From Selaginella moellendorffii (taxonomy: Eukaryota > Plantae > Lycopodiophyta): a DNA stretch of 64,000 nucleotides. Both the position numbers and the translations under genes were made by a program. This document shows, piece by piece, positions 1-50,950 of this stretch (positions within the stretch are counted from its first letter, which is position 1; each line of letters opens with the position of its first letter). Below the pieces are notes generated by a model that was given only the letters and a program-made list of their open reading frames with translations, made no database searches and had not been told where the DNA came from. The stretch is from positions 3,419,710 through 3,483,709 of the forward strand of contig NW_003314264.1 in NCBI RefSeq assembly GCF_000143415.4. Reading direction: 5' to 3'.

Positions 1-694
1 GGAGATGGAGCCGCAGGGATTCAAGCCGGAGCTCGTCACACTCGTCAACCTCCTCACCGCGAGCTGCTGCTTGGGCGATTTGAGCCGGGGGAAAGCAATG
101 CATTCCCGGATAATCGACGACAAGCTGGAGCTCACGCTCGTTGCCGAGAACGCCATCGTCAACATGTACGCCAAGTGTGGGAGCCTCGCGCAGGCGAAGC
201 TCGCGTTCGATGGGATGATCCACCCGAGGGACGTGATCAGCTGGAACGCGATCATAGCTGGGAATGCCGAGAACGGTGGCACCGAGACCTCGCTCCAGCT
301 CGCCAAGGACATGGTTCTCGACGGCGTGGCGCCCGACGCGACGACTTTCACCTGCGTGCTGCTGTGCTGCAGCCATGGAGGGCGGCTGGAGCAAGGTAGG
401 AGCTACTTCCTCTCCATGGTTTCGGATTTCCAGCTCTCACCATCGTCTGCGCATTACCAGAGCCTGATCGATCTGCTGGGACGGGCCGGGCGGCTCGAGG
501 AAGCGGAGGAGCTTATGAGCGTGATGCCATACCAGCCAGGAGTTGCGGGAGTGCGAGCTTACCTGGGGGCCTGCCGGACGCACTTTGACGAGGAGAGAGG
601 ATCGTCTGCTGGAGAGCTCGCCTGGGAGATGTACCCCGACGATCCCTCCAGCTACGTCCTCACGTCAAACATCGTTCGCAATACCGCGGTATGA
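1..694 (+). CDS. PLS-class PPR protein with E domain, 3' part only (begins before the window)
   Basis: NAIVNMYAKCGSL..AFDGM..RDVISWNAIIAG, CSHGG, HYQSLIDLLGRAGRLEEAEEL..MPYQP, YLGAC, SSYVLTSN are terminal PPR and E-domain motifs; stop at 692-694. Confidence 0.9.
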   Translation, partial: EMEPQGFKPELVTLVNLLTASCCLGDLSRGKAMHSRIIDDKLELTLVAENAIVNMYAKCGSLAQAKLAFDGMIHPRDVISWNAIIAGNAENGGTETSLQLAKDMVLDGVAPDATTFTCVLLCCSHGGRLEQGRSYFLSMVSDFQLSPSSAHYQSLIDLLGRAGRLEEAEELMSVMPYQPGVAGVRAYLGACRTHFDEERGSSAGELAWEMYPDDPSSYVLTSNIVRNTAV

Positions 695-769: not shown

Positions 770-1555
770 TCATCTCGAGAGCTCTTCCTGGTGGCGATGA
801 AAGTGGTCATCGACTATGGCATCAAGTAGCGGTTCCACAAGCCCTCCGGAATCGCTATCTAGCAAAGCGCCCATTGCCACAGACTTGTGGGGAGCCGTGT
901 CATACATCTCCTTGGCATGCGTTGCCCAGCCATGGCTAACCAGAGCTCCTATCCAAACAACGTACGCCGCATTCCCGTGGAGAGGCATCAGCCGAAACGC
1001 TTCGCTCGCTTCGTCCACAAGTCCATTGCGAGCGTAGCCACGCAGCAGCACTGTCCACAAGATCGAGTTTCGCTCACGGTTGCTGTCAAAGACCATCTTT
1101 GCCTGTTCCATGGCGCCCGCCTTCGCATAAGTATCAACCATAGCCGCCAACTTTGCAGTAGCGTGTGCCCGCGGTATGTTTTCCAGGACGCTAGTGTCCC
1201 ACTCGGGCATCTTGGCGAAAACGTTTCGAGCATCTTCGTCCTGCCCGGCTCTCGCCAGAGCCGCGAGGATCGTGTTCCAGGACACTACATCCCTCTTCCC
1301 TTCCATCCTCTCGAAGCAATCCATGGCTTCCGGGACGCGGCCACACTTGGAGTAGCAACTCAGGAGCGCGTTCCACGCGACAGTGTCGACTTCTCGCGAG
1401 GGGATCCGATCGAACGCCGCCTTTGCATCCTCGGGCTTGCACTGCTCCGCATAGCTTCCAATCATAGCTAATCCCTCTTCCTTGGTGTTCTTGAGCGAAA
1501 TATTTACGCCAGAGCCATAGAGAATTTTACTTACCAGATTCATTAGTTTATTCAT
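770..1555 (-). pseudogene. Truncated, internally deleted PPR paralog of the 22133-24799 gene
   Basis: AEQCKPEDAKAAFDRI..REVDTVAWNAL..MPEWDT is near-identical to the 22133-24799 protein; about 45 aa are missing after WDT; no homologous N-terminus and no E/DYW end. Confidence 0.75.
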
Positions 1556-1741: not shown

Positions 1742-3817
1742 ATGGAAGTTGTGATCGAATTTGGGAAGCACAAGGGCCAGAAGCTTGGAGAAATTCCTCT
1801 TGGCTATCTTCGCTGGGTATCGACTAAAATGGCGAACGAGAAGATCGGGAAGATCGCAATGGAAGCTCCCCGGCAGCGGCAGATCTCGACCCCATCGCGG
1901 GTGCCAGTAGAGCAACAATCGCCAGCGCCAGGTGATCTCTTGATCTCGATCCCAGGTGATCAAGATCATGAAATCCAGCTGCGCCGCGGGCGTCATGTCC
2001 AAGAACGCACAGGGGTCGTCGAATTCGCGAGCGTGGATCTGTGCGTCTCTGCACTGCGAGGCTTCAGCGGCGGGATCGTCGAAGCCCGGGTTCTGGAGGA
2101 GCGCGTCATCTCCAGCGCTAGAGTGTTCGCAGCAAATCGCCGCTACTTGTCCAACCTCCTGCTGCTCGCCTATGGCAAATGCGGCGGGGGCGTGAGCGAC
2201 GCAGTCCGGATCTTCACGGCGATGAGCAGCAAGGATCACTACTCGTGGAACACCATGCTCAAGGTCTTTCTCGACAACCATCTCTGGCTGGAAGCGGAGA
2301 GGCTCTTCAACGAGATGGCACCTGGAGTGGCCAACTGCATCGCTTGCACCGCGATGATCTCTCTGTATTCTTCGCAGGGGAGAGTGGCGGACGCTTGCGC
2401 AGCCTTCGATCGCATTCTTTCGCCGGACACGACTGCATGGAACGCCTTGATGGCGTGCTTCATGAGGAACGAGGTCTCCACTGATGCCCTCACTGCGTGT
2501 TTCGAGCGAATTCCCCACAAGGATCAAGTATCATGGAACCTTCTCCTTGCAGGGCTGGGGAGAGCTGGGCATCTCGCATTCCAGAAGATGCCCGTGTGGG
2601 ATTTGGTTGCCCTCAACACTTTGGTCGAGAAGAGGGGAGCTGCCGGCGAGAGGGCGAGAGAAGAATCGTGTGATCTGCGTGCCAGCGAGAAGGACATCGT
2701 CTCCTGGGCTCTCCTCCTGCGCGAGTATGCCCACAATGGGCAGCTCGAGGAGCTCGGCACCTGCTTTTTCAAGATGCCGTGCCACAACGAGGTGGTGGCA
2801 ACGCTGGTGCCATCCGCCTTTGGCAAGCAGGGATACGTGGAAGCGGCAAAGGCCGTGTTTGATCGAGTGCAGGGCTTTGGATCGTGGACCGCGCTCGTCA
2901 CGGCAAATTCCCACGCTGGAGAGCTTGGCGAGGCGGAAAAGGTTTTCTACCTCATGCCAATGTGGGGCATAGAATCGTCTACTGCGATTATGTCCGTGTA
3001 TGCAAGAAACGATGTGGTGGACAAGTGCGACTGGGTGTTTTCCGATCTCATGCAACACCGTGACGCCACCACCTGGACCGTGCTCATTGCCGCATATGCT
3101 CACTCAGGATATTATGTCTGCGCGCGTTCCGTTTTGGAGAGGATGCCGATGGCGGAGCTCACGAGCTGGAATGCAATGCTCAACTCGGAAAGAGAGGATC
3201 ATCTAATGGAACTGTTCAACGAAATGCCGGAGCGCGACATAAACTCCTGGACTCTCATGGTGTCTGCATTTGCCAAGCGCAGGGACATGTCTACTGCGCT
3301 GAAGCTTCTGGATCTGTGCCCGGCGTGGGCAGCCAGCGTCTGGAACGCGGTGATTTCTGGATATGGACGCCATGCTTGCGTTGAAGAGGCAGTGGGGACG
3401 TTTTTCAAGATGCTACTTGACGGTGTGGAGCCCGATTCCGTCACCTTCGTCTGTCTGTTGGGAGCGATGAGCTTTGCTGGAGATCTGGAGAAGGTGAGGG
3501 CATGGTTCCTGGTTCTGCGGGACTTTGATATTGAAGAGGAGAGGAGGCACTACTACTGTGTGATTGGTGCGCTTGCTCGAGCAGGCAGGGTGAGCGAAGC
3601 TGAAGAACTCCAGGAAGCCATGCCCTTCACTGCCGATACGGGCACCATGTTTGCTCTACTAAATGCGAGCAAGCTCGAGGGTGACCGTAAGGGTGCTTCG
3701 AAGGCAGCTCGGAAAGTGATGAGCCTGAAGTCAAGTAACACTGAAGTTGTCATGGCCAACATCTTGCTCAGTCACGCCAACAAAGGGCGCGTGACGTTCA
3801 GTTTTCGTGCTGGATGA
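1742..3817 (+). CDS. PLS-class PPR protein with degenerate E domain and an N-terminal FGKHKG..YLRW (DUF3820/ExoX-C-like) module
   Basis: 691-aa intronless ORF; starts MEVVIEFGKHKGQKLGEIPLGYLRWV; PPR repeats (DHYSWNTMLKVF, DIVSWALLLREYAHNG); HYYCVIGALARAGRVSEAEEL..MPF; no DYW. Confidence 0.85.
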   Translation: MEVVIEFGKHKGQKLGEIPLGYLRWVSTKMANEKIGKIAMEAPRQRQISTPSRVPVEQQSPAPGDLLISIPGDQDHEIQLRRGRHVQERTGVVEFASVDLCVSALRGFSGGIVEARVLEERVISSARVFAANRRYLSNLLLLAYGKCGGGVSDAVRIFTAMSSKDHYSWNTMLKVFLDNHLWLEAERLFNEMAPGVANCIACTAMISLYSSQGRVADACAAFDRILSPDTTAWNALMACFMRNEVSTDALTACFERIPHKDQVSWNLLLAGLGRAGHLAFQKMPVWDLVALNTLVEKRGAAGERAREESCDLRASEKDIVSWALLLREYAHNGQLEELGTCFFKMPCHNEVVATLVPSAFGKQGYVEAAKAVFDRVQGFGSWTALVTANSHAGELGEAEKVFYLMPMWGIESSTAIMSVYARNDVVDKCDWVFSDLMQHRDATTWTVLIAAYAHSGYYVCARSVLERMPMAELTSWNAMLNSEREDHLMELFNEMPERDINSWTLMVSAFAKRRDMSTALKLLDLCPAWAASVWNAVISGYGRHACVEEAVGTFFKMLLDGVEPDSVTFVCLLGAMSFAGDLEKVRAWFLVLRDFDIEEERRHYYCVIGALARAGRVSEAEELQEAMPFTADTGTMFALLNASKLEGDRKGASKAARKVMSLKSSNTEVVMANILLSHANKGRVTFSFRAG

Positions 3818-5649: not shown

Positions 5650-6212
5650 AAAATTATCCACCTTTAGAAAGGAAATGATTCGCCATCGAAGGCGAGCAAA
5701 ACGTCGACCTTCTGTCAGAGGGTACATCTTGCTCACAAGAACACTGGTTTTTTCGAATCATCTTCAAGCTGCTTGTTTTCAGTTGTTTAGGCTTTTCATC
5801 TTTGTCTTTTCATCCCGTGCCACTCATCAAGCATTCTTTATGGTGTGCTAAACAATTTCAGCTTCTTTGCTTCAGCGTTGGAAAAGCCAAACCACTGTTT
5901 CTTGGATTAACAGCAGCTATAAGATGAAATCCACCATGGATGTACTGCACGGTCTCAACTCGCATCTAGTCACACGAATATTATTGTCACCTAGAATGAG
6001 TTAAGCAACGGGTGGAGGAAATGTAACATTTTTCTTACCTCAAGGATAACGTCCGCAACCACCCCGTGTGCATTGGTAAGGATTCTCCTGTAAGAGATCG
6101 CAAATCCTGGAGAAGGAAAAAAGACAAAAAGAGTTCAACTCAGAAGAATCGAAGCAAGGTAGGGTTGGATATTATGAAAATCTTGACAACACTGCTGATT
6201 AAGTCCTAAGGT
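5650..6212 (-). pseudogene. Deletion-eroded inverted copy of the DEG10-like protease gene
   Basis: Reverse complement contains ordered blocks matching about 12935-13950: cagtgttgtcaagattttca, tccaggatttgcgatc..acaggagaatccttac, gtgcagtacatccatggtgga, gctgttaatccaagaaacagtgg, gtgagcaagatgtaccctctgac; intron remnants retained. Confidence 0.85.
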
Positions 6213-6449
6213 CCTCCAGAAAAATGTGGCAAATGAATTTTAAGAGATAAACTGGTATGCAACTGCAAATCTATATAAAACATTATATAAATTATTGACC
6301 ATATTAATTGATAAAAATGGCATAGTTATGGATTAAATAATCATAATAGAATAAATATTCTAATTATTGAAAAATAATTAAAAAATTTCATGATACCAAA
6401 TATAACAACGCTTTAAATATCACTTCTATTATAAACTATAAAAGGAAAA

Positions 6450-9400
6450 AAAATCAATTGATATTAATATATTGTATTCATAATTTATTAAGATGGTTTT
6501 TCATTAAAAAAACTAGGTCTAATACCATATACTATTATTAGTATAGTGGAATTTTAGTCTATATGAAAATGGTTTCAATCTAGACCATTTGTTCTTGTAT
6601 ATATTGTAAGGTTTTTGGGTTAATTATATATACACATTTTTTTATTTCATAGACTCACGTAAATGTTCTCTAAGGAGTGATTGGATTTATACTTTTTATT
6701 TAAATTTAACGTTGCATTCTCTAAATCTTTTTTTCTTTTGTAGTTTTCTCATTCCTTAATTTTTGTTTTTGTTTTAATTAAATTTATCTTCTTGATTGAG
6801 GCCTGTGAGTCTCAAAAGGTTAATTGTGTATCCAAAAGCTTTGTCATAGGTTTTAAAATTTTGTATCACTTGTTGATAATTTGTTGTTCTAGCATTTACA
6901 TTCTTAATATCACATTAAAAACAATTATACTTACTTTGTAAAGACTAATTCTGCAGTTACTATTTATGGCTGGTGGTGCTTTTAATCTTCATTCAACACT
7001 TACTATGATTCTTCTATTTTAGGCAGATATATAGATCATTATGTGATTAAGAATTTATTTAGGTTTTTATATTGGTGAAGATCCAACATAATGTTGTCTG
7101 GTATATGCATATATTAAGCTCATGATATGTTGTAGAAAGTAAAAACTTGTAGAAGTCTTTCTGTTAATCAAAAATCCAATTTAATATCATTCAGTAAATA
7201 TATATTATAAGTAGCCAAAGAGAACAACTAGAGAAACAATCTATAAAAGTTTAAATATAGAAGGAAAAAGGCCCATAAATAAAAATGCACCTTTTTTTCA
7301 AATTAATTAAGGGTATTGAGATATTTAGGGTTAAGTGTTCTCATACTAAGCTAGACAACCTTCTGAGAAGTCTAAATTTATAAACTTACATTTGATATTA
7401 AAGGGGTATCAAATGTAACTCTATTAATTTGCTAGGGGAATCACCATATATTGAGATTGACATTTAATGGTTTAATTTGGTCCTGCTAGGCTTGATTCGA
7501 GGGGTAAGGTGTAAAGAGAGTGTAACTCTCAACTTCCATTTATAAGAACGTGAATTTATTTACAAGGAAGTATAGTGGATTAAGCAATGAAAGAAAACAA
7601 CTCAAGAAGCAATTTATAAGTGTTCAAATATAAAGGGGAAATGACCTATGAACAAAAATTACACTTCCATTTCCAAGCTTATAATATGTTATAAAGGATG
7701 GTGAGAGTGTGAGACATAAACCCCCTAAATCCCAAAGTAGAACCAAAAAAGTGCAATATGATAGTGGTTAAAGTGGAAGTTTAATAAGTGTAACGTGTTT
7801 GGACTAAAAGTTTCAATTTGGAAAGTTAAGAGTGGGAGTAGAACCCCGAACAAAGTGCTTGAGGAATGAACACAAAACAATCAATGAATGAATCTCTAAA
7901 AAGGGACCCAAAATACCTAAGATGGATCTGAGATAAAGTTCAAGATATAGTTTGATATAGACCCAAGATGGAGTCTGAGATGAACCTAAAATGGAGTTCG
8001 AAATGGATTTGAGATGGACCCAAAATGGAGTTCGAGATGATATCTGAGATGGACTCAAAATGGAATTTGAGATAGAGTCCAATATAGACCCGAAATGGTA
8101 GACCCAAGATAGTAGACTTGAGATGGAGTCTAAAATGGACCCAAGATAGAGTTCGAGGTCGAGTTCGAGACTGAGATTAAGACCAAGTCTAAGTCCAAGT
8201 CTGAGTTTGAGTCCAATTCCAAGTCCGAGTCTGAGTTTAAGGGTGAAAGCACAAAGCAATCATATCCTAAACCTTAGGGGGTTTGGTGAGCTCTAAAAGT
8301 GTAATAGGGGGAGGACTTTAGTGGAATTAATTTGGTTAGGAAAAGCTAATATGACCAAGGAATGCTATACTTATGTGGTGGGTGATAAGATAACTATTGA
8401 GGAATTCAAAGTTAAAGTGAACACAGATAGACAAATAGGATAATTTGGTGAAATGTTCATTAGTTGCCCCGGGAGATCAAATAATCAATGCTCCCAATCC
8501 AAGTGTGGGTGGCACTACTTACTTGGATACCTGATATAGTTTATCAAAACCTCACCCTAACCACATGGTTAAGGCACCCAAAGCTAGAAGGTGGAAAGAG
8601 TACCCATAAGGCTTGTGTTGGGCTATAGTGTTTCCAGAATGTGAAAAAGAAGAAGAGTAGTCCTCTTATGTAGTGATCAAGGATATAGTCATGTGGTAAG
8701 AAAGCCCTAGAAATTAATAAGACTTAGTGGTTGGGCCTTCAAACCTTAACTTAATGGTAGTGTTAGCAAGTATGGTTATGAATAAAAAGGGATTTAGTGG
8801 GGATCAAAGACAAGATATTGGGGAAGAGTGTTCTTATATATTCGGGCATTCTAAGGATCTTAAAGTGTGGTCATGAGATGACCATTCATGGATGAATGGT
8901 TTAATTTGTGGGAGAGAAGACATATAAATGCTTACCTTTTGCACTTAGTCTAAGTGCTCCACATGTTTGATCCCAACAAACACCCAAATGCATCATTAAC
9001 ATATTAGTCTACCCATGAAATGAGAAAAAGGTGAATAGATATAGTTTAAATGTAACGGCATAAATACCATATACAGGACTAATATGTCCCCAAATCAGGA
9101 ATATAATTTACAAAGGTTGTTAATAAGACTCTTTCAAGTGTGTGGTTAAGTGACTAAAGTAAAATAAAAAATTTAATTATTTACAGAGAGTTAATTGTAA
9201 TTTCTTATTTGTTTGAGTTAGTAGCATTTGATTTGATAGAGCCTTTTATATAGTCAATTTCTAGTAATAAGTATATCATTATTGCTTTTAATTACTTGAG
9301 TTATCAAGTGAAATTTAGTGTTTTTACTAGTGCATCTACAATAACGATTAAATACTTCTTCCTTAATCAAATAGTGTTTTGATATCTTTGTTAAGAGTGA

Positions 9401-10260
9401 ATGCTTTCCAATAATAATCTTGCATTTATCATCCAGAAATGGATGGTTCAGGGGAATGGCTCTTTAGAACTTTCAAAACGATGATAGAAAAATATATGAA
9501 CTTTTAGCATTTAGATTGAGATGGTTATTTATTATATCTTTAATACATATATATCATATAGGTGTAAAATTCTATTAGTGTTTACCATATAAATTCTTAT
9601 ATAATCATGATTTATATTCCTATTGGAGTTAAGTTTACATTCACAATTATTATAAACTGTTGATAATAAGTTCTAGAGTTAATATTTAATAAACATTCTT
9701 CTATTAATTTAAGTGGAGTTTATTGAGCACTTAGGCCATGTACAAGTAAGACAACAATGGCACTATAACTCTCATCATCATTCATATATAAAGTATAAAG
9801 TGGATGACTTAGTATTAATTTATTTTCCCAATTATAGAAAAATATATGATTTATCTAAAAGGGTCTTTACCTACTGAAAGGGACTATATCAAGTGTTGTA
9901 GCATTTGGCTATAACTTTATGAAATTTAACACAACATTTAACAACTCAATTCTCCAAAAATTATGTATATGTTGCAATTCAAGTGTTTTGTATAAAGGGA
10001 TTAGAAACAAATTACACCACCTACAAATCTATTAGTGCCTTTTCTTAATGTTTTTTTAAATCCTAAACTTTCAATTAAATTAGTCTTAATTGATTTCTAT
10101 TCTTCAAAGAGGAAGGGATGATAATTGCTATTCTTCAAAGAAGAAGAGATGATATAAAGTTTATATATACAACTATGATGCTTTATACTATTATTAGTAT
10201 AGTGAGAATTTAGTTGGTTTCAAGTTGGACCATTTTTTATATAAGTTATGGTTTTGAATA
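6450..10260 (+). mobile_element. Highly decayed Ty3/gypsy-like retroelement relic (boundaries approximate)
   Basis: About 9200-9930 translates, with stops and frameshifts, to a degenerate integrase: FELVAFDLIEPF..NKYIIIAFNYLS..FFLNQIVF..MLSNNNLAF..KYKVDDLVLIYFP..KGLYQVL; 21-bp direct repeat at 6528 and 10184, with purine tracts (about 10107-10150) before the second copy. Confidence 0.65.
7905..8242. repeat. Degenerate tandem repeat (GAGATGGACCCAAAATGGAGTTC-like units grading into hexamers)
   Basis: Repeated gagatgg/acccaa/gagttc units, then agtcta/agtcca/agtctg hexamers. Confidence 0.75.
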
Positions 10261-10941
10261 TGCATATTTTTATATTTCATGCACTTTAATTTTTATATTA
10301 TTTTATAATTTAAAAATTCTTAAAAGTTTGGAATAATTTACATTATATTGAAAGAAAAAATATTATAAAATTAGGTTTTACATTCTATTAACTATTAAAT
10401 ATTATGGAAATAAAAATATAATTTTAAAAAAAATACCAATTCTTAATAATTTATTTTAGGTATTCCAATAATTGGTAATTTAAGAGAAACATTTTGTTCT
10501 TTTATATGATAAAAATGAGAAAATTTGCTCTTTTTAATGTAATTTTTTATGTTACAGTGTTTATAAAGCAATATGTTCAAAAATATCAAAAATAGTTTTT
10601 TCTCAGCAAATTGCTTAAAAAAAGTTATAGTATTGACATAGGTAATTTCATTATAAAATTCTTTGCCCCATTTTTATGATAGTTTTATTTGTCATGTATA
10701 TATAAATAAAAGAAAATAAATAATCTATATAATTTTTGGAAAGTTTTTATTATTATTGTAAAACCTATAAATTAGTTTAAAGCATTTCTAATTCAATAAA
10801 ATAATGCCCATCAAGGCTTTTAACTGGTTTGATGTTTGATGTTACTATTAATGTATGTATATTCTTTTAATTTTGGCTTAAAAATCTTATTAAAATAAAA
10901 TAAAAATTCTTATTAACAATTGATATCAAACAAAAATTCGT

Positions 10942-12630
10942 TTAACCAACGCAAAGATTTGAGAATACAACATACGAGGCAGGATTATCATCGTGCTCTT
11001 GTTCTAGTGAAACCCTTATCATCTCCCCTTGAACTCTACAAGCGCCAGCCACACTTCTCCAGCTCACAGCATCGGGCTCAAATGGCATGCCGTGGAAGAG
11101 CTCCTCGGCACGCTCCAGCTGCCCGGCCCGAGCCAGGACATCGATCACGATCATGTAGAGCTCGGGAGTGAGAAAGATTCCATCGTAGTCACTAGCTATG
11201 GTCGCAAAACAGTGACATGCTACTTCCACCATGCCTGCGTGACTACACGCACATAGAACACTGACAAAGGTCGAATCTATGGGAGAAATCCCGTCGAGGA
11301 TCATCAACGCAAACAGCCACAGCGTGTCGAGAGCTCCACCGCTTGCGGCATGAGCAGCGATCAGGGCATTCCACGAGACGGCATCACGATGGAGGTCGTG
11401 GACGAAGAAGAGATCTCTCGCCACCTCCAGCTTCCCACATTTCGCATACATATCAAGAACGGCGGTTCTCATCGACAGATCGGTGTCGAGTTTCTGTTCC
11501 ACGATCTCTTCGTGGATGATTCTTCCCACGGATAGCGATGGAATGCTCGCGCAGGAGTTGAGAGCTGCGAGAATCGCTATGTGGTCGATCCTAACACCCT
11601 CGAGATCCATCGCGAGAAACAGCCAGAGAGCTTGCTCGTGATGCCCGTTCCGGGCATAAGCGTGGATCATTGCAGTCCAGCCCACTGGATCATTGGATTG
11701 AAATGAGCAAAAGAACTCCCGCGCTTTCTCAAGATTTCCATTGTCGGAGTAGCCTCCCAGCATAACAGTGCACGAAACATCGTCTTGCTCGGGCATTCTA
11801 TCGAATATCCTCCTCGCCATAGCCACATTTCCGTTCCTGGCGTAGGCTTGGAGCATCCCAGTCCAGGACACGATATCTCTCCGCGGGATCTCATCGAACA
11901 GAGCTTTCGATTCCTCGATCCGGCCCTGGCGTCCCAGTTCCTGGAACAAATCCATCCATGCCAGTGCATCCCTTTGGGGGATTCTGCGGAAGAGCTCCTT
12001 CGCTTGCTCGAGCTTACCCTCTTTGGTCAACCCAGCCAGCACCGTGTTCCACGACACGAAATCTCGCCCTGCCATCTCGCCAAGCAGCAAATCCATTGCG
12101 ATCGAGGCGTGGCCGTGCTGCGCATACGCCGAGATAACAGTATTGAGCGAAATCACATCAGGTTTCTCGATCCTGGCGAAGATCTTTGCAGCGCTCTCGA
12201 CATGCCCTCGCTGGGCATACGCAGCGAGCATGATATTCCAAGAAACGTTGTCGCGATCCGGGATCTGGTCGAAGCAGTGCCTGGCTTGGACGAGATCGTT
12301 GCTTTGGACAAATGCCCGGATCATCGTGTTCCACGAAACCACATTTCGATGTGGCATTCGATCAAAGGCCTCCTCTCCTCTGCGACAGTGCCCTCTCTGG
12401 GCATTTGCCGTGACCATAATATTCCAGGAGTAAATATTTCGCTGGGAGATGCGATCGAAGGCGAGTCGAGCTTGATCCAGGCAGCCGCACTGCGCATACA
12501 TGGCGACGAGGAGATTCCCAATGAGAGTATTGCGATCGGCGCCATCTCTCTTAAGCTGCGAGTGGAGGCGCTTGCCCTCGAGCAATGCCCTGCTAGCAGC
12601 ATACTGGCGAACAAGAGAGGCGGCATTCAT
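10942..12630 (-). CDS. PLS-class PPR protein (tandem S-motif array, shortened E domain)
   Basis: 562-aa ORF; ~31-aa repeats (RNIYSWNIM, RNVVSWNTM, RDNVSWNIM, RDIVSWTGM); CACSHAG; IDVLARAGQLERAEEL..MPFEPD; ASYVVFSN. Confidence 0.9.
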   Translation of the reverse strand: MNAASLVRQYAASRALLEGKRLHSQLKRDGADRNTLIGNLLVAMYAQCGCLDQARLAFDRISQRNIYSWNIMVTANAQRGHCRRGEEAFDRMPHRNVVSWNTMIRAFVQSNDLVQARHCFDQIPDRDNVSWNIMLAAYAQRGHVESAAKIFARIEKPDVISLNTVISAYAQHGHASIAMDLLLGEMAGRDFVSWNTVLAGLTKEGKLEQAKELFRRIPQRDALAWMDLFQELGRQGRIEESKALFDEIPRRDIVSWTGMLQAYARNGNVAMARRIFDRMPEQDDVSCTVMLGGYSDNGNLEKAREFFCSFQSNDPVGWTAMIHAYARNGHHEQALWLFLAMDLEGVRIDHIAILAALNSCASIPSLSVGRIIHEEIVEQKLDTDLSMRTAVLDMYAKCGKLEVARDLFFVHDLHRDAVSWNALIAAHAASGGALDTLWLFALMILDGISPIDSTFVSVLCACSHAGMVEVACHCFATIASDYDGIFLTPELYMIVIDVLARAGQLERAEELFHGMPFEPDAVSWRSVAGACRVQGEMIRVSLEQEHDDNPASYVVFSNLCVG

Positions 12631-22132: not shown

Positions 22133-24799
22133 CTACCAAATGTTTTTGCAAGAGCAAACACCACCTACAAACCTGTGAATCCTGTTGGCATCCTTCACAA
22201 CAATCTCTCGTCCAACAACCTTGGACAAAAACTGGGTTGCGTCATGGCAGTCATAACACATTCTCAAATTCTTGGTCACCTCAACTTTGGTCCCAGGCTG
22301 CGTAGAAATGAAAGCGTAACCAAGCGCAAGCTTCTCACTGTGGCGGCACAGAAGCTCCTCTTTCGCTCTCTCCTCATCGCCGTCATCTCCCAGCATCGTC
22401 ACCACATTAGTATTTGGAACATAGCCAGCCTCTCTCATGAGTACTTCCAGCCTCGCAAGCTCCTTGTGAACGTTCTCGATTTGGGGATGCGAGGTATCCC
22501 CAACAACGAATCTATGAAGCTTGCCTCCGACCCTCACCCGGCTTACCCCTGGAATCCGCTTCACGTTTCTCGTCAACATCATCTCCTTGACAAGTTTTAC
22601 ATCGTCTTCGTTTCCATCCCCACTGCTAAGAGTGTTGGCCAACAAGACGTGAAGAGAACCGCTTCTTGAGTCCAATTCCAGTGCTTTCTCTACCATACGC
22701 TTTGCTCTATCGCAGTCATTGAAGCTCCTGCAAGCTCCCAGAAATGCGTGCCAAGCTACCTCGTCCGGAACGAAAGGCATGTCGAGGATCAAAGCTTCGG
22801 CTTTGTCCAAGTGTCTTGCTCGCCCAAAGAGATCTATCATGCAAGTGTAGTGCCTCTCTGTAGCTTCGATCGCGTAGTCTCCCACCATCAAATGAAAGCA
22901 GTCCCTCGCGTCCATCACCTTCGCGACATGGCTAAAACCATCCAGGAGGCAAACGAACGAGACCTCGTTTACCTCAATTCCTTCCATGGATATAAACCGA
23001 AGAAGCTCCATTGACTCCCAGACCTGACCGTTTCGCGAGTATCCCGCAAGCACTGAGTTGAGCATCTCGGCTTGCCAGCACGGAGCCAACACTAAAACCT
23101 CGCAAGCTTTGCTAATTTGCCCATGTCTGGCATATGCCGCAGCGAGCAAGGTCCACGATATCGAGTTCCTCTCCATCATCCCGTCGAAAGCTTTTTTGGA
23201 ATCCAGCGGCGTAGCGTGGCTGGCGTAGCATGAAAGCATGGCGTTCCATGAAACTGTGTTTGTTTTTGCCATCTTTCTTAGAACAAGCTCGGCCATCTCG
23301 ACTTCCCCGCTCGCCACATAGGCGGAAAGAAAAACCGTCCAGAGAACGACATCCCGCTGCTCAGCATAAAAGAATCTTTCTTTGATTATATTCATGCTAT
23401 CTCTTCCGGTGATCTCGACTATGCGCGTAGTACACGCCGTTGCATCCCATTGCGGCATCAAATAGAAGACCCTTTCCGCTTCAACAAAATCCCCAGCATT
23501 GGTATTTGCAGTGACGAGCAAAGTCCACATTGCTACACACCTCTTGGGGGCAATATCAAATGTTTCTTTGCACTCAATTGCGCAGCCATGCCTGGCCAAA
23601 GCTCCTAACAAAACAATGTACGCCACAGTGTCGTGTAGAGGCATCAACCAAAACGCTTTGCTCGTTTCGTCCACGAATCCATTGTGAGCGTATCCACGCA
23701 ACAGCACCGTCCACAAGATCAAATTCCACTCGAGGCTACTGTCAAAAACCACCTTTGCTTGTTCCATCTCGCCAGCCTTCCCATAAGCATCAACGATTGC
23801 CGCTAAGTTGGCGGTGTTTATCTGCGGCATTTTGTCCAAGACGCTGGCCGCAGCATTTGAATCCCCTGCTCTGGAGAAGGCATTGAGCAAGGAATTAAAC
23901 GAGACTATCGATCTGCCACCTTGCATGTCATCGAACTTTCTCTTGGCATCTGCGTCGTCGTGCGAAGGGCATGAGTTCCAAGAGACGGTGTCCCACTCGG
24001 GCATCTTGGCGAAAACGTTTCGGGCATCTTCGTCCTGCCCGGCTCTCGCCAGAGCCGCGAGGATCGTGTTCCAGGACACCATATCCCTCTTCCCTTCCAT
24101 CCTCTCGAAGCAATCCATGGCTTCTTGGACGCGGCCACACTTGGAGTAGCAACTCACGAGCGCGTTCCACGCGACAGTGTCGACTTCTCGCGAGGAGATC
24201 CGATCGAACGCCGCCTTTGCATCCTCGGGCTTGCACTGCTCGGCAAAGACCCCGATCATGGCCGTGCAAGAGATCTTGTTGGCCACCACCCCCTCGTCCT
24301 CCATCTCGCGGAAGAGCTCCTGGGCATCGCTCCACTTTCGATTGTCGAGAAAGACCTTGAGCATGGTGTTCCACGAGTAGTCGTCCCGGGAAGCCATGCT
24401 CGCGAACACTCTGTGAGCTTCGGCGACGCCCTGGCACCTCGCAAACATGAGGATGATGAGATTGGAGAGGTATCTCTTGTTGGCCGAGAACACGGTGCCA
24501 CTGGCGAGCACCCGGCGATGGAGAGCCTCGGCCTCACTCAGCCCACCACGAAAGCTTCTCAGCGTCGAGATACAATCCTCCGCTCGCGCGAACGCGGGCT
24601 CCCCGCGGACGACGTTGCGTGAACTTCCTCCGAGCTCGCGATCGCTAGGAGGAATGTTAGTAATTTCTTCTAGAACTTGCCGGGCCATCGCGCCGATCTT
24701 CTCGTCCTTCATCTTGTCACACATCCAGCGCAGGTAGCTTTCTGGTACTTCCAAGAGGGACTTACCCTTGTGCTTCCCGAACGGCAGGATCGTGTGCAT
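22133..24799 (-). CDS. PLS-E-DYW-type PPR protein with an N-terminal FGKHKG..YLRW (DUF3820/ExoX-C-like) module
   Basis: 888-aa intronless ORF; starts MHTILPFGKHKGKSLLEVPESYLRWM; PPR array; E domain; PGVS box, HRFVVGDTSHPQ, GYVP, HSEKLA, KNLRMCYDCH, terminal CSCKNIW. Confidence 0.92.
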   Translation of the reverse strand: MHTILPFGKHKGKSLLEVPESYLRWMCDKMKDEKIGAMARQVLEEITNIPPSDRELGGSSRNVVRGEPAFARAEDCISTLRSFRGGLSEAEALHRRVLASGTVFSANKRYLSNLIILMFARCQGVAEAHRVFASMASRDDYSWNTMLKVFLDNRKWSDAQELFREMEDEGVVANKISCTAMIGVFAEQCKPEDAKAAFDRISSREVDTVAWNALVSCYSKCGRVQEAMDCFERMEGKRDMVSWNTILAALARAGQDEDARNVFAKMPEWDTVSWNSCPSHDDADAKRKFDDMQGGRSIVSFNSLLNAFSRAGDSNAAASVLDKMPQINTANLAAIVDAYGKAGEMEQAKVVFDSSLEWNLILWTVLLRGYAHNGFVDETSKAFWLMPLHDTVAYIVLLGALARHGCAIECKETFDIAPKRCVAMWTLLVTANTNAGDFVEAERVFYLMPQWDATACTTRIVEITGRDSMNIIKERFFYAEQRDVVLWTVFLSAYVASGEVEMAELVLRKMAKTNTVSWNAMLSCYASHATPLDSKKAFDGMMERNSISWTLLAAAYARHGQISKACEVLVLAPCWQAEMLNSVLAGYSRNGQVWESMELLRFISMEGIEVNEVSFVCLLDGFSHVAKVMDARDCFHLMVGDYAIEATERHYTCMIDLFGRARHLDKAEALILDMPFVPDEVAWHAFLGACRSFNDCDRAKRMVEKALELDSRSGSLHVLLANTLSSGDGNEDDVKLVKEMMLTRNVKRIPGVSRVRVGGKLHRFVVGDTSHPQIENVHKELARLEVLMREAGYVPNTNVVTMLGDDGDEERAKEELLCRHSEKLALGYAFISTQPGTKVEVTKNLRMCYDCHDATQFLSKVVGREIVVKDANRIHRFVGGVCSCKNIW

Positions 24800-25055
24800 T
24801 CCTTCGCAGAGATCAAGGAAAAAATGAAACTATAGCCATCAAGAACCCTAAACTCTCGTTCCATTCAAACATTTCTTTCTAGAGGGGGATTCTTCCTTTT
24901 CTACTCTACTTGGATCGTTCTTGGCTGTGGTCTGGCAGGATCGTGTGCATTCCTTCGCAGAGATCAAGGAAAGAATGAAACTATCAAGAACCCTAAATTC
25001 TCGTTCCATCTTTCTACAGGCTTCTCTACTCTACTTGGATCGTTCTTGGCTGTGG
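24783..25055. repeat. Imperfect tandem duplication of the sHSP-stop to PPR-start junction
   Basis: 24783-24930 and 24934-25055 both read ggcaggatcgtgtgcattccttcgcagagatcaaggaa...ctactctacttggatcgttcttggctgtgg. Confidence 0.9.
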
Positions 25056-30553: not shown

Positions 30554-32908
30554 ATGTGTTTGCTCAAGCTCCGAGCAGCAATCGATGGATTGGAGAACAG
30601 GCAGCGAACAGTCTTTGATCTCACATCGCATTGCGCATCGCTCCTCCAGATCTGTCGCAACGCCAAGGCGGCGGCATCGGAAGGACAGCGCCTTCACGCA
30701 GTCCTTGCTCGCTATGGGGTCGATCGATCCACCTTCCTGGGCAATCTCATCGTCCAGATGTATGGCAACTCTAGGAACCTGGCGGAGGCGTGCGCGGCAT
30801 TCGCCCAAATCGCGCAGCGCAACGAGTTCTCGTGGAACTCGCTGCTGCTGGCATTTGTGCAGAGCGGGCGTCTGGACGATGCCATGAAATCGTTCGATCG
30901 GATGCCGCAGTGGGATGAAGTTTCATACAACACGATGGTTTCTGCGTACTGCCAGATCGGACACTTGCATCTCGCAAAGGAGATGTTCGATTCCATGTCC
31001 TGCCCAGGAGTTGTGACATGGACCACCATGCTCTCAGCATATGCCCAGAACGGGCATCTTGGCGAAGCAAGAGAGCTCTTCCTCGCCATGCCCGAGAAGA
31101 ACACCGTGACTTGGAACACCATGATCCAGGCCAATCTCCGCGAGGGATTCGTCGAAGATGCCTGGTGCCTCTTCTCGGTGATGCCCTCCCGGGACGTTGT
31201 CTCTTGGAACATCGTCGTCACTGGGCTCACCCAGATCGGCGAGCACGCCGACGCCCACCTCGTCCTCGCCAAGATCCCCGCTCGGAGCATCTTCACCTGG
31301 AACGCGATGCTGTGCGCCAGCGTACACGATGGGCACCTCTCCACCGCGAGGATAATCTTCCGCGAGATGCCCGAGAGGAACACGATCTCCTGGAACGCGA
31401 TCATCACTGGGCTCGCGCACAATGGCCAGCCGCAAGAGGCCCAGGCTGCGTTTGAGGAGATGGAGAAGAGGGACGTGATCTCCTGGACGTCGCTCGTCGC
31501 CGCCTACGCACAGATCGAGCGCCTGGATCGCGCGCGCGCGCTGTTTGATCGGATGCCCGAGCAGGACGTTGTGGCCGGGAATGCGCTGCTTATGGGATAC
31601 GGGCGAGCCCGGCTGGTAGGCGAGGCTTGGGAGATCTTTAGCGCCACCCCTGCTCGAGTGAGCCTCACTTGGAACCTCATGCTCCAGGCTATGGCGGACA
31701 GCCGCTGCCACTGCGAGGACGCGCGAGAGCTCTTCGAGAAGATGGCCCGGCACAACATCGTTTCATGGACAACAATGCTTAGCTGCTACGCAGAGGGCGG
31801 TCAGGATCAATCGGCCAAAGAGATCTTCGACGCGATGCCTCAGAGGAATCTGGTTTCATGGAGCGCCATGCTGCGTGGATTTATCCAGAATGGTCATCTT
31901 GACAATGCCGTGAGAATTTTCTACAAGTCTCCAGCGAGGGATCTAGTCGCGTGGACGCTTCTTGTGAGCGCTTTTGCGGAGCGAAACGAAGTAGAAAAGG
32001 CGAAAAGTTGGTTCAAAGATATGCCACAAAAGGATCTAATTGCCTGGACCGCGATGCTCACAGCATTTGCCGTGAATGGGGATTTGGATCGCGCCTGGAA
32101 TGTGTTCCACAGGCTTCCAGCGAGGAACACGGTCGCCTGGAACGCCATGATCGCGGCTTGCGGCCAGAACAACCAGGGATCACGGAGCTTGACACTGCTG
32201 GGCTTGATGGACGTGGAAGGGATCCATCCCAGCGCGACGACTTTCATCAGCGTGGCGGACGCTTGCACGAGCCTGACGGCGCTCAAGGAAGGCCGGCTTG
32301 TCCACCAGGAGATCACGCTCGCCAGCGGCGATCTCAGCTCCTCCGAGTCTCTCGGAATCGGCAACGCGCTGGTTAGCATGTATGGCAAGTGTGGCAAGCT
32401 CGACGAGGCGCGAGAGGTGTTCGCGGGGATGATCCAGAGGAGCGATATCACCTGGAACGCGATCATCGCCGCGCACACCCAGAACCACTGCAATCTCGGC
32501 GACGTCGCGGAGCTCCTGGAGTTGATGCTTCTCGACGGCGTGGCGGTGGACGAGATCACGTCCGTGAGCGTGCTCACCGTGTGTAGCCAGGCAGGGCTTC
32601 TCCTCCACGCCAGGGAGTTCTTCCACTCGATGAGCCGCGAGTTCTCCAGCGCTCCAGGGGCGGATCACTACGCTTGCATGATCGATCTCCTCGCGCGGGT
32701 TGGCGAGCTGGAGCAGTGCATGAAGCTGATCTGCGCCATGCCTTTCCAGGCGGATGGGATCTCGTGGATGAGCCTCCTGGGCGCTTGCAAGGGATTGGGC
32801 GATCTCGAGCGAGCATTAGTGGCGGCGGAGATGGCCGTGCGCTTGAATCCCGAGAACTCGGCGGCTTACATTCTCTTCTCCAACATTCTAGAGAAGGACA
32901 AAGGATGA
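30554..32908 (+). CDS. PLS-class PPR-E protein with a long tandem S-motif array
   Basis: 784-aa ORF; many 31-aa repeats (MPEKNTVTWNTM, MPERNTISWNAI, MPQRNLVSWSAM); HYACMIDLLARVG, WMSLLGAC, AAYILFSN. Confidence 0.92.
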   Translation: MCLLKLRAAIDGLENRQRTVFDLTSHCASLLQICRNAKAAASEGQRLHAVLARYGVDRSTFLGNLIVQMYGNSRNLAEACAAFAQIAQRNEFSWNSLLLAFVQSGRLDDAMKSFDRMPQWDEVSYNTMVSAYCQIGHLHLAKEMFDSMSCPGVVTWTTMLSAYAQNGHLGEARELFLAMPEKNTVTWNTMIQANLREGFVEDAWCLFSVMPSRDVVSWNIVVTGLTQIGEHADAHLVLAKIPARSIFTWNAMLCASVHDGHLSTARIIFREMPERNTISWNAIITGLAHNGQPQEAQAAFEEMEKRDVISWTSLVAAYAQIERLDRARALFDRMPEQDVVAGNALLMGYGRARLVGEAWEIFSATPARVSLTWNLMLQAMADSRCHCEDARELFEKMARHNIVSWTTMLSCYAEGGQDQSAKEIFDAMPQRNLVSWSAMLRGFIQNGHLDNAVRIFYKSPARDLVAWTLLVSAFAERNEVEKAKSWFKDMPQKDLIAWTAMLTAFAVNGDLDRAWNVFHRLPARNTVAWNAMIAACGQNNQGSRSLTLLGLMDVEGIHPSATTFISVADACTSLTALKEGRLVHQEITLASGDLSSSESLGIGNALVSMYGKCGKLDEAREVFAGMIQRSDITWNAIIAAHTQNHCNLGDVAELLELMLLDGVAVDEITSVSVLTVCSQAGLLLHAREFFHSMSREFSSAPGADHYACMIDLLARVGELEQCMKLICAMPFQADGISWMSLLGACKGLGDLERALVAAEMAVRLNPENSAAYILFSNILEKDKG

Positions 32909-32933: not shown

Positions 32934-34895
32934 ATGGATCGAAGCGATTGCATCCGGCTGCTCGAGTCGTGCAAGAGCCTATCGCTCGCGGAGACCGCCC
33001 ATCGGCGCGTCCGCGAGGTTTATCCCGCGATCCAGGACGATGCCTTCCTCTCCAACAAGATCGTCCAGATGTATGGCCGCTGCGGGAGCGTGGATCGCGC
33101 CAGGATCGCGTTCGAGAGGAGCCAGAACAAGGATCCGAGCTCCTGGGTGTTCATGCTTTGCGCGTACTCGCAAAACGGGCACCTGGACGATGCGAAAGAG
33201 ATCTTCGACCGGATGCCGGATAGGAATCAAGTGGCCTGGACCGCGATGCTTACGGGGTACGCGCGGGTCGGGGATTTGATCGAGGCCAAGCGCGTCTACG
33301 ATCGAATGCCGGAGTGGGACGTGGTTTCTTCCACCGCGATGCTCAGAGCGTATGCCCAGAATGGGCATATTGTCAATAGTGAGAAGCTCTTTAGCGAGAT
33401 GCCGGAGAAAAATCTTGTTTCGTGGAGTGTAATGCTGGATATGTTCTCACACAACAATGATCTTGCGAAGGCGAGACTTTGTTTTGACAATATGCCTGAG
33501 TGGGATGTTGTTTCCTCGACTACAATGCTTGCAGCATATGCCCAACACGGGCAATATTATAACGCTGAAGGGGTCTTTAACTACATGGAGCACTGGACTC
33601 TAGCTACTTGTTCCACGATGCTCGCAGTTTTTGCACAGAGTTTCCAGGTAGAAGAAGCTAGAAACTTGTTCTCGAGTTTGCCGCAAAGAGATTTCGCGTC
33701 GTGGATTGCTATGTTGAACTGCTATGCTCAAGTTGGTGATGTAGACCAAGCAAAGATTGTGTTTAATCAGATGCCCGAGTGGAATCTCGCCACCTTCACG
33801 GCAATGCTGAACGCGTTTGGAGCCAATGACAAAGTTGACGATGCGAAAGTCTTGTTTGATTCCACACCCGAGCTCGACATGGTACTTTGCACTGCCATGA
33901 TCGAAGCTTATGCCCAGGCCGGGCATACCGTTCTTGCAAAACACATATTTGAACAGATGACTCAGCATGACATTGTGTCATGGAACTCGATGCTATCAGC
34001 TTACGTTAACAAAGGTGGCAGCCTCAATGGTGCTAGGGACGTGTACACTCGGATGCCGTGCTGGAGCGTAGTCACCTGGAACTTAATGTTTGTGGCATAT
34101 ACCCAGGAAGGGCATCTGGAACTGGCAAGGCTCTTGTATGAGGAGATTCCAGTCCGAAACCTAGCATCTTCAACGATTATGCTCGAAGCGTACTCAAGAA
34201 ACGGCTACATTGAAGAGGCTAGTCAAATCTTTGCACAAATGCCTGTGCAAGATCTTGTTTCTTCCACAGTCTCTATCAATCTTTCTGCCCAGTGCAAGAA
34301 TTTGTATTTGGCGAGAGAGATCTTTGAGAAAATGCCGGAGCGCAACGTTGTCTCATGGACCGCACTCTTGAACGCTTACGTTTCAAACTCCCAATTGAAC
34401 TACGCGTTGTCTTTGTTTCATACTCTCCCTTCGCATACTGTTGTAACTTGGAACACCATTGTGGCAGCGTATGCCATGAACGGGCATTCCAGTACTGCGC
34501 TCTTTCTCTTCTACTCGATGAGGATGGCAAGCGAGGCTTCACCGGATGGAATCTCGCTCTTGTCCGTTCTGGTCGCTTGCAATCACACGGGAGACTCGGA
34601 GCTCGCAAGGTCTTTGTTCGTGTCAATGTCGCTGGACTCTGGGATTGGAGCTAGCAAAGAGCACTATGGCTGTATGGTTGATGTCCTGGGAAGAGCCGGT
34701 TACCTGGACGAGGCCGAAGATCTTGTGAACAACATGCCGTTCGAGCCCGATGTTCTAGAGTGGATGAGCTTGCTTGGAGCTTGTCGAGGCTATGGCGACG
34801 CTGCTAGAGGGACCAAGATTCTGGCCCGGATTGTGGCGCTGGATCCGAGAAACGTCGCGGCGTTCGTGTATCTCGCTAGAAAAATACAAAGTTGA
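32934..34895 (+). CDS. PLS-class PPR-E protein with a long tandem S-motif array
   Basis: 653-aa ORF; MPDRNQVAWTAM, MPEWDVVSSTAM repeats; HYGCMVDVLGRAGYLDEAEDL..MPFEPD..WMSLLGAC. Confidence 0.92.
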   Translation: MDRSDCIRLLESCKSLSLAETAHRRVREVYPAIQDDAFLSNKIVQMYGRCGSVDRARIAFERSQNKDPSSWVFMLCAYSQNGHLDDAKEIFDRMPDRNQVAWTAMLTGYARVGDLIEAKRVYDRMPEWDVVSSTAMLRAYAQNGHIVNSEKLFSEMPEKNLVSWSVMLDMFSHNNDLAKARLCFDNMPEWDVVSSTTMLAAYAQHGQYYNAEGVFNYMEHWTLATCSTMLAVFAQSFQVEEARNLFSSLPQRDFASWIAMLNCYAQVGDVDQAKIVFNQMPEWNLATFTAMLNAFGANDKVDDAKVLFDSTPELDMVLCTAMIEAYAQAGHTVLAKHIFEQMTQHDIVSWNSMLSAYVNKGGSLNGARDVYTRMPCWSVVTWNLMFVAYTQEGHLELARLLYEEIPVRNLASSTIMLEAYSRNGYIEEASQIFAQMPVQDLVSSTVSINLSAQCKNLYLAREIFEKMPERNVVSWTALLNAYVSNSQLNYALSLFHTLPSHTVVTWNTIVAAYAMNGHSSTALFLFYSMRMASEASPDGISLLSVLVACNHTGDSELARSLFVSMSLDSGIGASKEHYGCMVDVLGRAGYLDEAEDLVNNMPFEPDVLEWMSLLGACRGYGDAARGTKILARIVALDPRNVAAFVYLARKIQS

Positions 34896-47790: not shown

Positions 47791-47819
47791 AATCCGGCGA
47801 AGGGTTCCTTGTCTACTGG

Positions 47820-47919
47820 NNNNNNNNNNNNNNNNNNNNNNNNNNNNNNNNNNNNNNNNNNNNNNNNNNNNNNNNNNNNNNNNNNNNNNNNNNNNNNNNN
47901 NNNNNNNNNNNNNNNNNNN
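47820..47919. other. Assembly gap (100 N) inside pol
   Basis: Run of n. Confidence 1.
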
Positions 47920-47951
47920 AAGGAAAAACCTCGCATACTAGCCGGGACCCG

Positions 47952-50927: not shown

Positions 50928-50950
50928 CGCAACCAATCCTCTGATACCAA

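What the first reader, a model, noticed from the sequence alone, without database searches (positions are those of the whole stretch)
1742..3817. A second, diverged PPR keeps the same N-terminal module: a conserved family with DYW and DYW-less members
Seen: MEVVIEFGKHKGQKLGEIPLGYLRWVSTKMANEKIG aligns with MHTILPFGKHKGKSLLEVPESYLRWMCDKMKDEKIG. FGKHKG, P, YLRW, KM and EKIG are kept, while the following linker is unalignable and of different length and the PPR motifs have diverged substantially. This copy stops after a degenerate E domain. Inference: motif retention against a diverged linker suggests purifying selection on the module rather than a one-off fusion. An E-type plus DYW-type pair recalls trans-complementing editor pairs, and the shared module could be their docking domain.
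Basis: partly seen in the sequence, partly recalled or inferred. Interest (0 to 1): 0.75.

Follow-up and report, generated by a model that had tools for sequence, protein, structure and literature searches.

The report
Truncated, decaying paralogue of DUF3820-PPR editor
A spikemoss gene really does share a small bacterial/phage-type front module with a neighbouring RNA-editing enzyme gene, but it has lost its catalytic end and is broken on the plant's other chromosome copy, so it looks like a fading duplicate and not a working partner.

Summary
Window 1742-3817(+) is an intact 691-aa ORF in Selaginella moellendorffii (gene A). It is 36% identical over its whole length to the 888-aa PPR-DYW gene at 22133-24799(-) (gene B). 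Both begin with the same ~36-aa FGKHKG..YLRW..EKIG module, which matches Pfam PF12843 QSregVF_b/DUF3820 and PF20600 ExoX-like_C.

Synonymous sites between A and B are saturated. The module is still 56% identical, the same as the first PPR motifs (54%). The linker is 33% identical over 27 alignable residues and differs in length by 33 aa. So the module was kept by selection after an old duplication of one already-fused gene.

The partner-pair reading is not supported:
- A has no E2, E+ or DYW, and no remnant downstream.
- A lacks about two PPR motifs and parts of two more.
- On the syntenic second haplotype of the same assembly, A has a +1 frameshift at codon 3 that leaves the module core without an ATG. 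It also has a 23-bp deletion that ends the frame 11 codons later, and a further 1-bp deletion.
- B, and a third family member with two modules, are intact on both haplotypes.

A is most likely a dispensable, decaying paralogue. This scan had already noted the DUF3820-PPR-DYW architecture, at gene B and on other pieces of this genome. I could not test for copies in other species, for expression or for binding.

The parts
1742..3817 (+). Gene A: intact 691-aa ORF with a DUF3820-like module, a linker, a PPR tract and a degenerate E1-like end. It has no E2, E+ or DYW.
   Evidence: ORF. Pfam finds PPR families plus a weak PF12843 hit and no E_motif or DYW. It is annotated in NCBI as a 691-aa protein on GL377568.1.
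1742..1849 (+). N-terminal module (aa 1-36), FGKHKG..YLRW..KM..EKIG
   Evidence: 56% identical to B's module, with pN 0.31 against pS 0.74. PF12843 scores 22.2 bits and PF20600 20.5 bits on the isolated piece. AF2 of aa 1-50 gives pLDDT 74, a short hairpin plus two helices.
1850..2029 (+). S/P/Q/R-rich linker (aa 37-96), poorly alignable to B and 33 aa longer
   Evidence: Only 27 of 60 residues align, at 33% identity, with dN 0.81.
2030..3637 (+). PPR tract of mostly 31-aa motifs. Relative to B it has a 58-aa gap (about two motifs) and two 5-aa gaps inside motifs.
   Evidence: Alignments. Pfam PPR scores 151.7 bits in A against 233.2 bits in B.
3638..3817 (+). Degenerate E1-like end and stop codon. 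The alignment to B stops at B residue 726.
   Evidence: Pfam E_motif gives no hit. tblastn with B residues 700-888 finds nothing downstream of A.
22133..24799 (-). Gene B: 888-aa DUF3820-PPR-E-DYW paralogue, intact on both haplotypes
   Evidence: Pfam finds PF12843, PPR, E_motif and DYW_deaminase. The second-haplotype copy is also 888 aa with no indels and omega 0.26.
24692..24799 (-). Gene B N-terminal module (aa 1-36)
   Evidence: PF12843 scores 34.6 bits on the isolated piece. Alignment A1.
770..1555 (-). Truncated B-like PPR fragment lying head-to-head with gene A. It has no module and no C-terminus.
   Evidence: BLASTP gives 60% identity to B residues 180-440 with a 47-aa gap. At the DNA level, 275 bp are 94.9% identical to B and 332 bp are 76% identical.

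Best explanation
Gene A is an old, C-terminally truncated paralogue of the neighbouring DUF3820-PPR-DYW gene B. Both descend from a single ancestral gene that already carried the N-terminal DUF3820/QSregVF_b module. After the duplication the module stayed under purifying selection, as strongly as the first PPR motifs, while the linker drifted. Gene A later lost its E2/E+/DYW deaminase end and about two PPR motifs. It is now dispensable. In the sequenced plant it is an intact ORF on one haplotype and a disrupted gene on the other. So it is best read as a decaying duplicate, or at most a non-catalytic RNA-binding remnant, and not as an E-type specificity factor that docks onto B. Shown: the paralogy, the module identity, the regional conservation pattern, the loss of DYW and the lesions on the second haplotype. 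Inferred: dispensability or decay, and the module's role as an accessory adaptor.
For: - A and B are 36% identical over all of A, including the module.
- By region, the module is 56% identical and aa 97-290 are 54%. The linker is 33% over 27 of 60 residues, and the rest is 33-37%. pS is 0.6-0.76 throughout, so the duplication is old and there has been no recent conversion.
- Pfam finds no E_motif or DYW in A, and there is no DYW remnant downstream.
- The window is GL377568.1. The syntenic copy on GL377582.1 of the same assembly is 95.8% identical over 6 kb.
- In that copy A has a +1 T at codon 3, +9 bp at aa 484, -23 bp at aa 601-608 and -1 bp at aa 683.
- There the module frame has no upstream ATG, so the first ATG is M30, after YLRW. 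The frame stops 11 codons after the 23-bp deletion.
- B has no indels between the haplotypes. P0072 and P0222 are both 751 aa.
- Allelic omega is 0.47 for A (1.25 in aa 601-691) and 0.26 for B.
- Polarising the allelic amino-acid differences against B shows no asymmetry, 6 versus 4.
Against: - The window allele is a clean 691-codon ORF.
- Allelic omega of 0.47 is below 1 (binomial p = 0.011) and not significantly different from B's (Fisher p = 0.30). Some constraint may therefore persist on this allele.
- The single-base insertion at codon 3 of the other haplotype could be an assembly error, although the 23-bp deletion could not.
- No expression data were available.
- The 58-aa gap is in phase with the repeats, so it could be a functional change in array length.
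Confidence: 0.6

Rival explanations
1. A is a functional DYW-less PPR protein on this haplotype. It would be an RNA binder or stabiliser, or a specificity factor that uses some deaminase in trans. The broken copy on the other haplotype would then be a null allele tolerated in the heterozygote.
For: The window allele is an intact 691-aa ORF. Allelic omega is 0.47, significantly below 1. The module has no non-synonymous allelic change. The large gap relative to B is in phase with the 31-aa repeats.
Against: Three frame-breaking lesions have accumulated on the other haplotype, while B and P0072 have none. Two motifs carry 5-aa internal deletions. No E_motif is detectable. The derived amino-acid changes are not concentrated on the broken allele, 6 versus 4.
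Confidence: 0.3
2. A (E-type) and B (DYW-type) form a trans-complementing editing pair, and the shared DUF3820 module is their docking domain.
For: Both proteins carry the same conserved module and lie 18 kb apart. In other proteins the module often occurs in tandem copies, which is compatible with an interaction unit.
Against: Known trans-complemented factors keep E1/E2(/E+) and borrow a short DYW protein such as DYW1, DYW2 or MEF8 (my knowledge of the Arabidopsis literature). A has no detectable E motif and stops in early E2. B has a full PPR array of its own. The module core is frame-shifted out on A's second allele. No interaction test was possible.
Confidence: 0.05
3. The resemblance of the two N-termini is due to recent gene conversion or to chance, not to selection.
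For: Gene conversion does occur in this neighbourhood. The fragment at 770-1555 has a 275-bp block that is 94.9% identical to B, next to a 76% block.
Against: Synonymous sites within the module are saturated (pS 0.74) while pN is 0.31. blastn finds no A-B nucleotide match in the module. Chance is excluded by E = 1.2e-12 and by the Pfam hits.
Confidence: 0.02

Closest known systems
PLS-class PPR-DYW organellar C-to-U RNA editing factors (RefSeq names B 'At4g02750' by similarity)
   Same: Gene B has PPR repeats, an E motif and a complete DYW deaminase domain. Gene A shares the PPR tract and the start of the E region by descent.
   Different: Both begin with a DUF3820/QSregVF_b module where a targeting peptide is expected. 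A has lost E2, E+ and DYW and is broken on one haplotype.
E/E+ PPR proteins complemented in trans by short DYW proteins (CRR4/DYW1, DYW2, MEF8 in Arabidopsis; my knowledge)
   Same: A DYW-less PPR protein and a DYW-bearing one occur in the same genome.
   Different: A lacks recognisable E1/E2/E+ motifs. B is a full-length editor and not a short DYW donor. The system is described in angiosperms. No interaction evidence exists here.
Pfam PF12843 QSregVF_b (DUF3820) / PF20600 ExoX-like C-terminal domain
   Same: The FGK[HY]KG...P..YL.W core followed by a helix is present. Hits are at or above threshold. The profile built from A and B finds 1761 library proteins at E <= 0.001.
   Different: Of the 20 best-scoring hits I scanned with Pfam, the ones with other recognisable domains were an RNase_T exonuclease and SF2/SNF2 helicases, usually with tandem module copies. 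A small stand-alone homologue sits in a phage-like replication module. In S. moellendorffii the module sits at the N-terminus of PPR proteins. Its function is unknown. ExoX residues 1-167, without this domain, retain activity (PMC3753628).
S. moellendorffii PPR-DYW with two N-terminal DUF3820 modules (P0072 = XP_024516766.1)
   Same: The same module, 55.6 bits to the A/B profile for its second copy, sits in front of a tract of 31-aa PPR motifs.
   Different: It has two modules and an intact DYW, and it is intact on both haplotypes. It is not specifically closer to A or B than ordinary PPR-DYW proteins are.

Membership tests
PPR-DYW RNA editing factor | Tandem PPR motifs | tested here: met
   PF01535 scores 151.7 bits and PF13041 131.7 bits in A.
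PPR-DYW RNA editing factor | E1/E2 motifs after the PPR tract | tested here: not met
   PF20431 E_motif does not hit A at E <= 0.1, although B hits at 8.6e-11. A's ORF stops at the position of B residue ~726, in early E2.
PPR-DYW RNA editing factor | C-terminal DYW cytidine deaminase domain | tested here: not met
   PF14432 is absent from A and present in B. tblastn with B residues 700-888 finds only B in the window.
DUF3820 / QSregVF_b (PF12843) | Score at or above the Pfam gathering threshold (22 bits) | tested here: inconclusive
   A scores 22.2 bits as an isolated 53-aa piece but 17.2 bits in the full protein. B scores 34.6 and 28.2 bits.
DUF3820 / QSregVF_b (PF12843) | Conserved FGKxKG ... 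P..YL.W core | tested here: met
   G8, K9, G12 and Y22 are invariant or nearly invariant across the 29 aligned modules, and all four are present in A.
Trans-complementing E-type / DYW-type editing pair | The E-type member retains E1/E2(/E+) motifs that recruit the deaminase | tested here: not met
   A has no E_motif hit and is truncated in E2.
Trans-complementing E-type / DYW-type editing pair | The DYW donor is a short protein with few PPR motifs | tested here: not met
   B is 888 aa with a full PPR array and its own E motif.
Trans-complementing E-type / DYW-type editing pair | Physical interaction and a shared editing site | not testable with these tools
   No multimer prediction, interaction data or editing data were available.

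The most novel reading that the evidence does not exclude
The DUF3820 module is a homotypic or heterotypic docking unit that assembles PPR editing factors. On this reading the DYW-less gene A, on the haplotype where it is intact, still guides editing by borrowing the deaminase of B or of another module-bearing PPR-DYW protein. That would be a lycophyte-specific way of building editosomes.
Probability: 0.05. Interest if true: 0.8.

Novelty: new variant of a known kind. Interest (0 to 1): 0.35.

Why it matters
The useful result is indirect. An old paralogue pair kept the DUF3820 module as well as it kept its best-conserved PPR motifs, which argues that this bacterial/phage-type add-on does something in Selaginella PPR-DYW proteins. 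I found no paper that mentions DUF3820 together with pentatricopeptide proteins, nor in a 2026 kingdom-wide survey of editing factors. Gene A itself is probably a gene caught in the act of being lost. It is a natural heterozygous null allele, which could be used to test whether the gene is dispensable. It gives no support to a new trans-acting editing mechanism.

Tried and rejected
- Word-index searches restricted to the module found only the queries themselves (B residues 1-45; P0072 residues 1-110). Copies in other species could therefore not be tested. A blank here is not evidence of absence.
- The full HMMER search with the two-sequence module profile gave 1761 hits. The 150 listed are dominated by proteins with several tandem modules, and only one PPR protein (P0072) is visible.
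- There is no solved structure by sequence (best E = 0.68) or by Foldseek with the AF2 model of A residues 1-50 (best E = 2.2).
- My recollection that the ExoX C-terminal domain binds MutL was not borne out. The ExoX structure paper I read never mentions MutL. It says only that the 1-167 truncation keeps activity.
- Pairwise dN/dS between A and B is unreliable because dS is saturated, so I used pN/pS and identity by region instead.
- Polarising the allelic differences with B gave only 10 informative sites and no asymmetry.
- P0005, the RefSeq model of the second allele, was not on record for a contig look-up. The older JGI model P0071 gave the locus.
- I did not fold full-length A, because AF2 would model a PPR solenoid confidently whether or not the gene is functional.

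Full report
**Where and what**

The window is scaffold GL377568.1 of the Selaginella moellendorffii assembly GCA_000143415.2. The finding's coordinates, 1742-3817(+), are one uninterrupted 691-codon ORF, called gene A here. The peptide it was compared with is the N-terminus of an 888-aa ORF at 22133-24799(-), called gene B.

**Checking the observation**

They share FGKHKG, L15, E17, P19, YLRW, KM and EKIG.
- Within the window each module finds only the other (tblastn E = 1.2e-12). All other hits have E > 0.1.
- Pfam places both modules in PF12843 (QSregVF_b, formerly DUF3820) and PF20600 (ExoX-like C-terminal). For PF12843, B scores 34.6 bits. A scores 22.2 bits as an isolated piece, just at the 22-bit cutoff, and 17.2 bits within the whole protein.
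- In an alignment with 27 small stand-alone homologues, A keeps the invariant or nearly invariant G8, K9, G12 and Y22.
- An AF2 model of A residues 1-50 has moderate confidence (pLDDT 74). It shows a short hairpin followed by two helices.
- BLASTP aligns A to B over all of A (36% identity, E = 5e-134), starting at residue 1 of both. These are paralogues that inherited the fusion, not two independent fusions.
- A's alignment stops at B residue 726, in the early E2 region. A has no Pfam E_motif or DYW hit, whereas B has both. No DYW-like sequence lies downstream of A.

**Conservation by region**

I aligned A and B and split the codon alignment into regions.

| Region of A | Identity | Rates |
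|---|---|---|
| Module, aa 1-36 | 56% | pN 0.31, pS 0.74 |
| Linker, aa 37-96 | 33% over 27 of 60 residues; 33 aa longer in A | dN 0.81 |
| aa 97-290 | 54% | dN 0.43-0.44 |
| Remainder | 33-37% | dN 0.66-0.82 |

Synonymous sites are saturated everywhere, including inside the module, and blastn finds no A-B nucleotide match in the module. The shared residues are therefore not the product of recent gene conversion. The duplication is old, and the module was kept by selection about as well as the best-conserved PPR motifs. The module is not uniquely conserved, though, and the sample is only 36 codons.

**Is gene A a working gene?**

The same assembly holds a second, syntenic copy of the whole region on GL377582.1. 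It has the same gene order, is 95.8% identical over 6 kb, and differs by a roughly 4.7-kb AT-rich indel further along. This is the other haplotype of the sequenced plant.

Gene B is 888 aa on both haplotypes. It has no indels and an allelic dN/dS of 0.26 (22 non-synonymous and 23 synonymous changes).

Gene A's second allele carries four indels:
- An extra T in codon 3 (ATGGAAGTTTGTG against ATGGAAGTTGTG).
- A 9-bp in-frame insertion at aa 484.
- A 23-bp deletion at aa 601-608.
- A 1-bp deletion at aa 683.

After the first insertion, the ATG frame stops within about 30 codons. The frame that encodes the module has no ATG between an upstream stop and the module. The first ATG in that frame is M30, after FGKHKG..YLRW, and that is where the JGI model EFJ27301 starts. 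After the 23-bp deletion the frame ends 11 codons later. This is why RefSeq models only 424 aa there.

Allelic dN/dS for A is 0.47 (30 non-synonymous and 19 synonymous changes), rising to 1.25 in aa 601-691. It is below 1 (binomial p = 0.011) and not significantly different from B's (Fisher p = 0.30). Polarising the 30 amino-acid differences against B gives 6 sites where the window allele looks ancestral and 4 where the broken allele does. So there is no sign that only the broken allele is drifting.

Relative to B, A also lacks 58 aa (about two motifs, in phase with the repeats) and has 5-aa gaps inside two further motifs.

Taken together, A is dispensable at least in the heterozygote. It is most simply read as a paralogue on its way out. 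Residual function of the intact allele cannot be excluded.

**The family**

A HMMER search of 1.84 billion representative proteins with the two-module profile gave 1761 hits at E <= 0.001.

- The best hit is another S. moellendorffii PPR-DYW protein, P0072 (XP_024516766.1, 751 aa). It has two N-terminal modules and is 751 aa on both haplotypes. Its second module shares the plant-type KM..E..G helix with A and B.
- Of the 20 other listed hits that I scanned with Pfam, some carry an RNase_T exonuclease or SF2/SNF2 helicase domains. The rest show only the module, usually in two to eight copies.
- One close stand-alone homologue lies in a phage-like replication module, next to AAA_24, DUF5906 and ERCC4 genes.

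The module is thus an accessory unit of nucleic-acid enzymes whose function is unknown. E. coli ExoX without it (residues 1-167) keeps its activity (PMC3753628). There is no solved relative by sequence or by Foldseek.

A family of DUF3820-PPR proteins therefore exists in this genome. Its only DYW-less member seen here is the truncated gene A.

I could not find members in other species. The two word-index searches on the module returned only the queries, which says little either way.

**The partner-pair idea**

From what I know of the Arabidopsis literature, factors complemented in trans keep their E1/E2(/E+) motifs and borrow a short DYW protein (DYW1, DYW2 or MEF8). Gene A has no detectable E motif. 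Gene B is a full-length editor with its own PPR array. The module core is frame-shifted out on one of A's two alleles. Nothing measured here points to docking, and no interaction test was possible. I give this reading about 5%.

**Novelty**

No paper in the searchable library mentions DUF3820 together with pentatricopeptide. A 2026 kingdom-wide survey of editing-factor domain fusions does not mention QSregVF or ExoX. This scan had already recorded the architecture at gene B of this window and at two-module genes on other pieces of this genome.

What this report adds:
- Long-term conservation of the module across an old duplication.
- The demonstration that the 'second member' is a truncated gene that is broken on one haplotype.

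Interest is modest. Gene A is an ordinary case of gene decay inside an unusual and still unexplained architecture.

Noticed in passing
window 770-1555 (-): A third, truncated B-like PPR fragment lies head-to-head with gene A. It is a mosaic. A 275-bp block (window 1194-1468) is 94.9% identical to gene B, and the adjoining 332 bp are only 76% identical. This suggests gene conversion from B or a composite origin. On the other haplotype it is annotated as a 183-aa gene.
   Followed up: partly
window 24785-25000 (-), just upstream of gene B's ATG: The 3' end of the upstream HSP20-type gene, the short spacer and the first 17-18 bases of gene B (ATGCACACGATCCTGCC) are repeated. The repeat period is about 170 bp, so a second MHTILP start lies upstream.
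   Followed up: no
window ~6000-10900: An AT-rich stretch (GC 0.29-0.37) lies between the ribosomal protein S9 gene and the next PPR gene. From the gene coordinates, that interval is about 4.7 kb shorter on the second haplotype. This is probably a haplotype-specific insertion such as a transposable element.
   Followed up: no
window 46591-50936 (-): Two long ORFs show retrotransposon-type motifs when read by eye: a gag-like CCHC zinc knuckle, reverse-transcriptase and integrase-like stretches. This looks like an LTR-retrotransposon polyprotein broken into two ORFs. I ran no family scan on them.
   Followed up: no
window 5-694, 10942-12630, 30554-32908, 32934-34895: At least four further PPR ORFs with the same 31-aa motif style end after an E-like region without a DYW domain. 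DYW-less PPR genes are therefore not rare in this neighbourhood.
   Followed up: no
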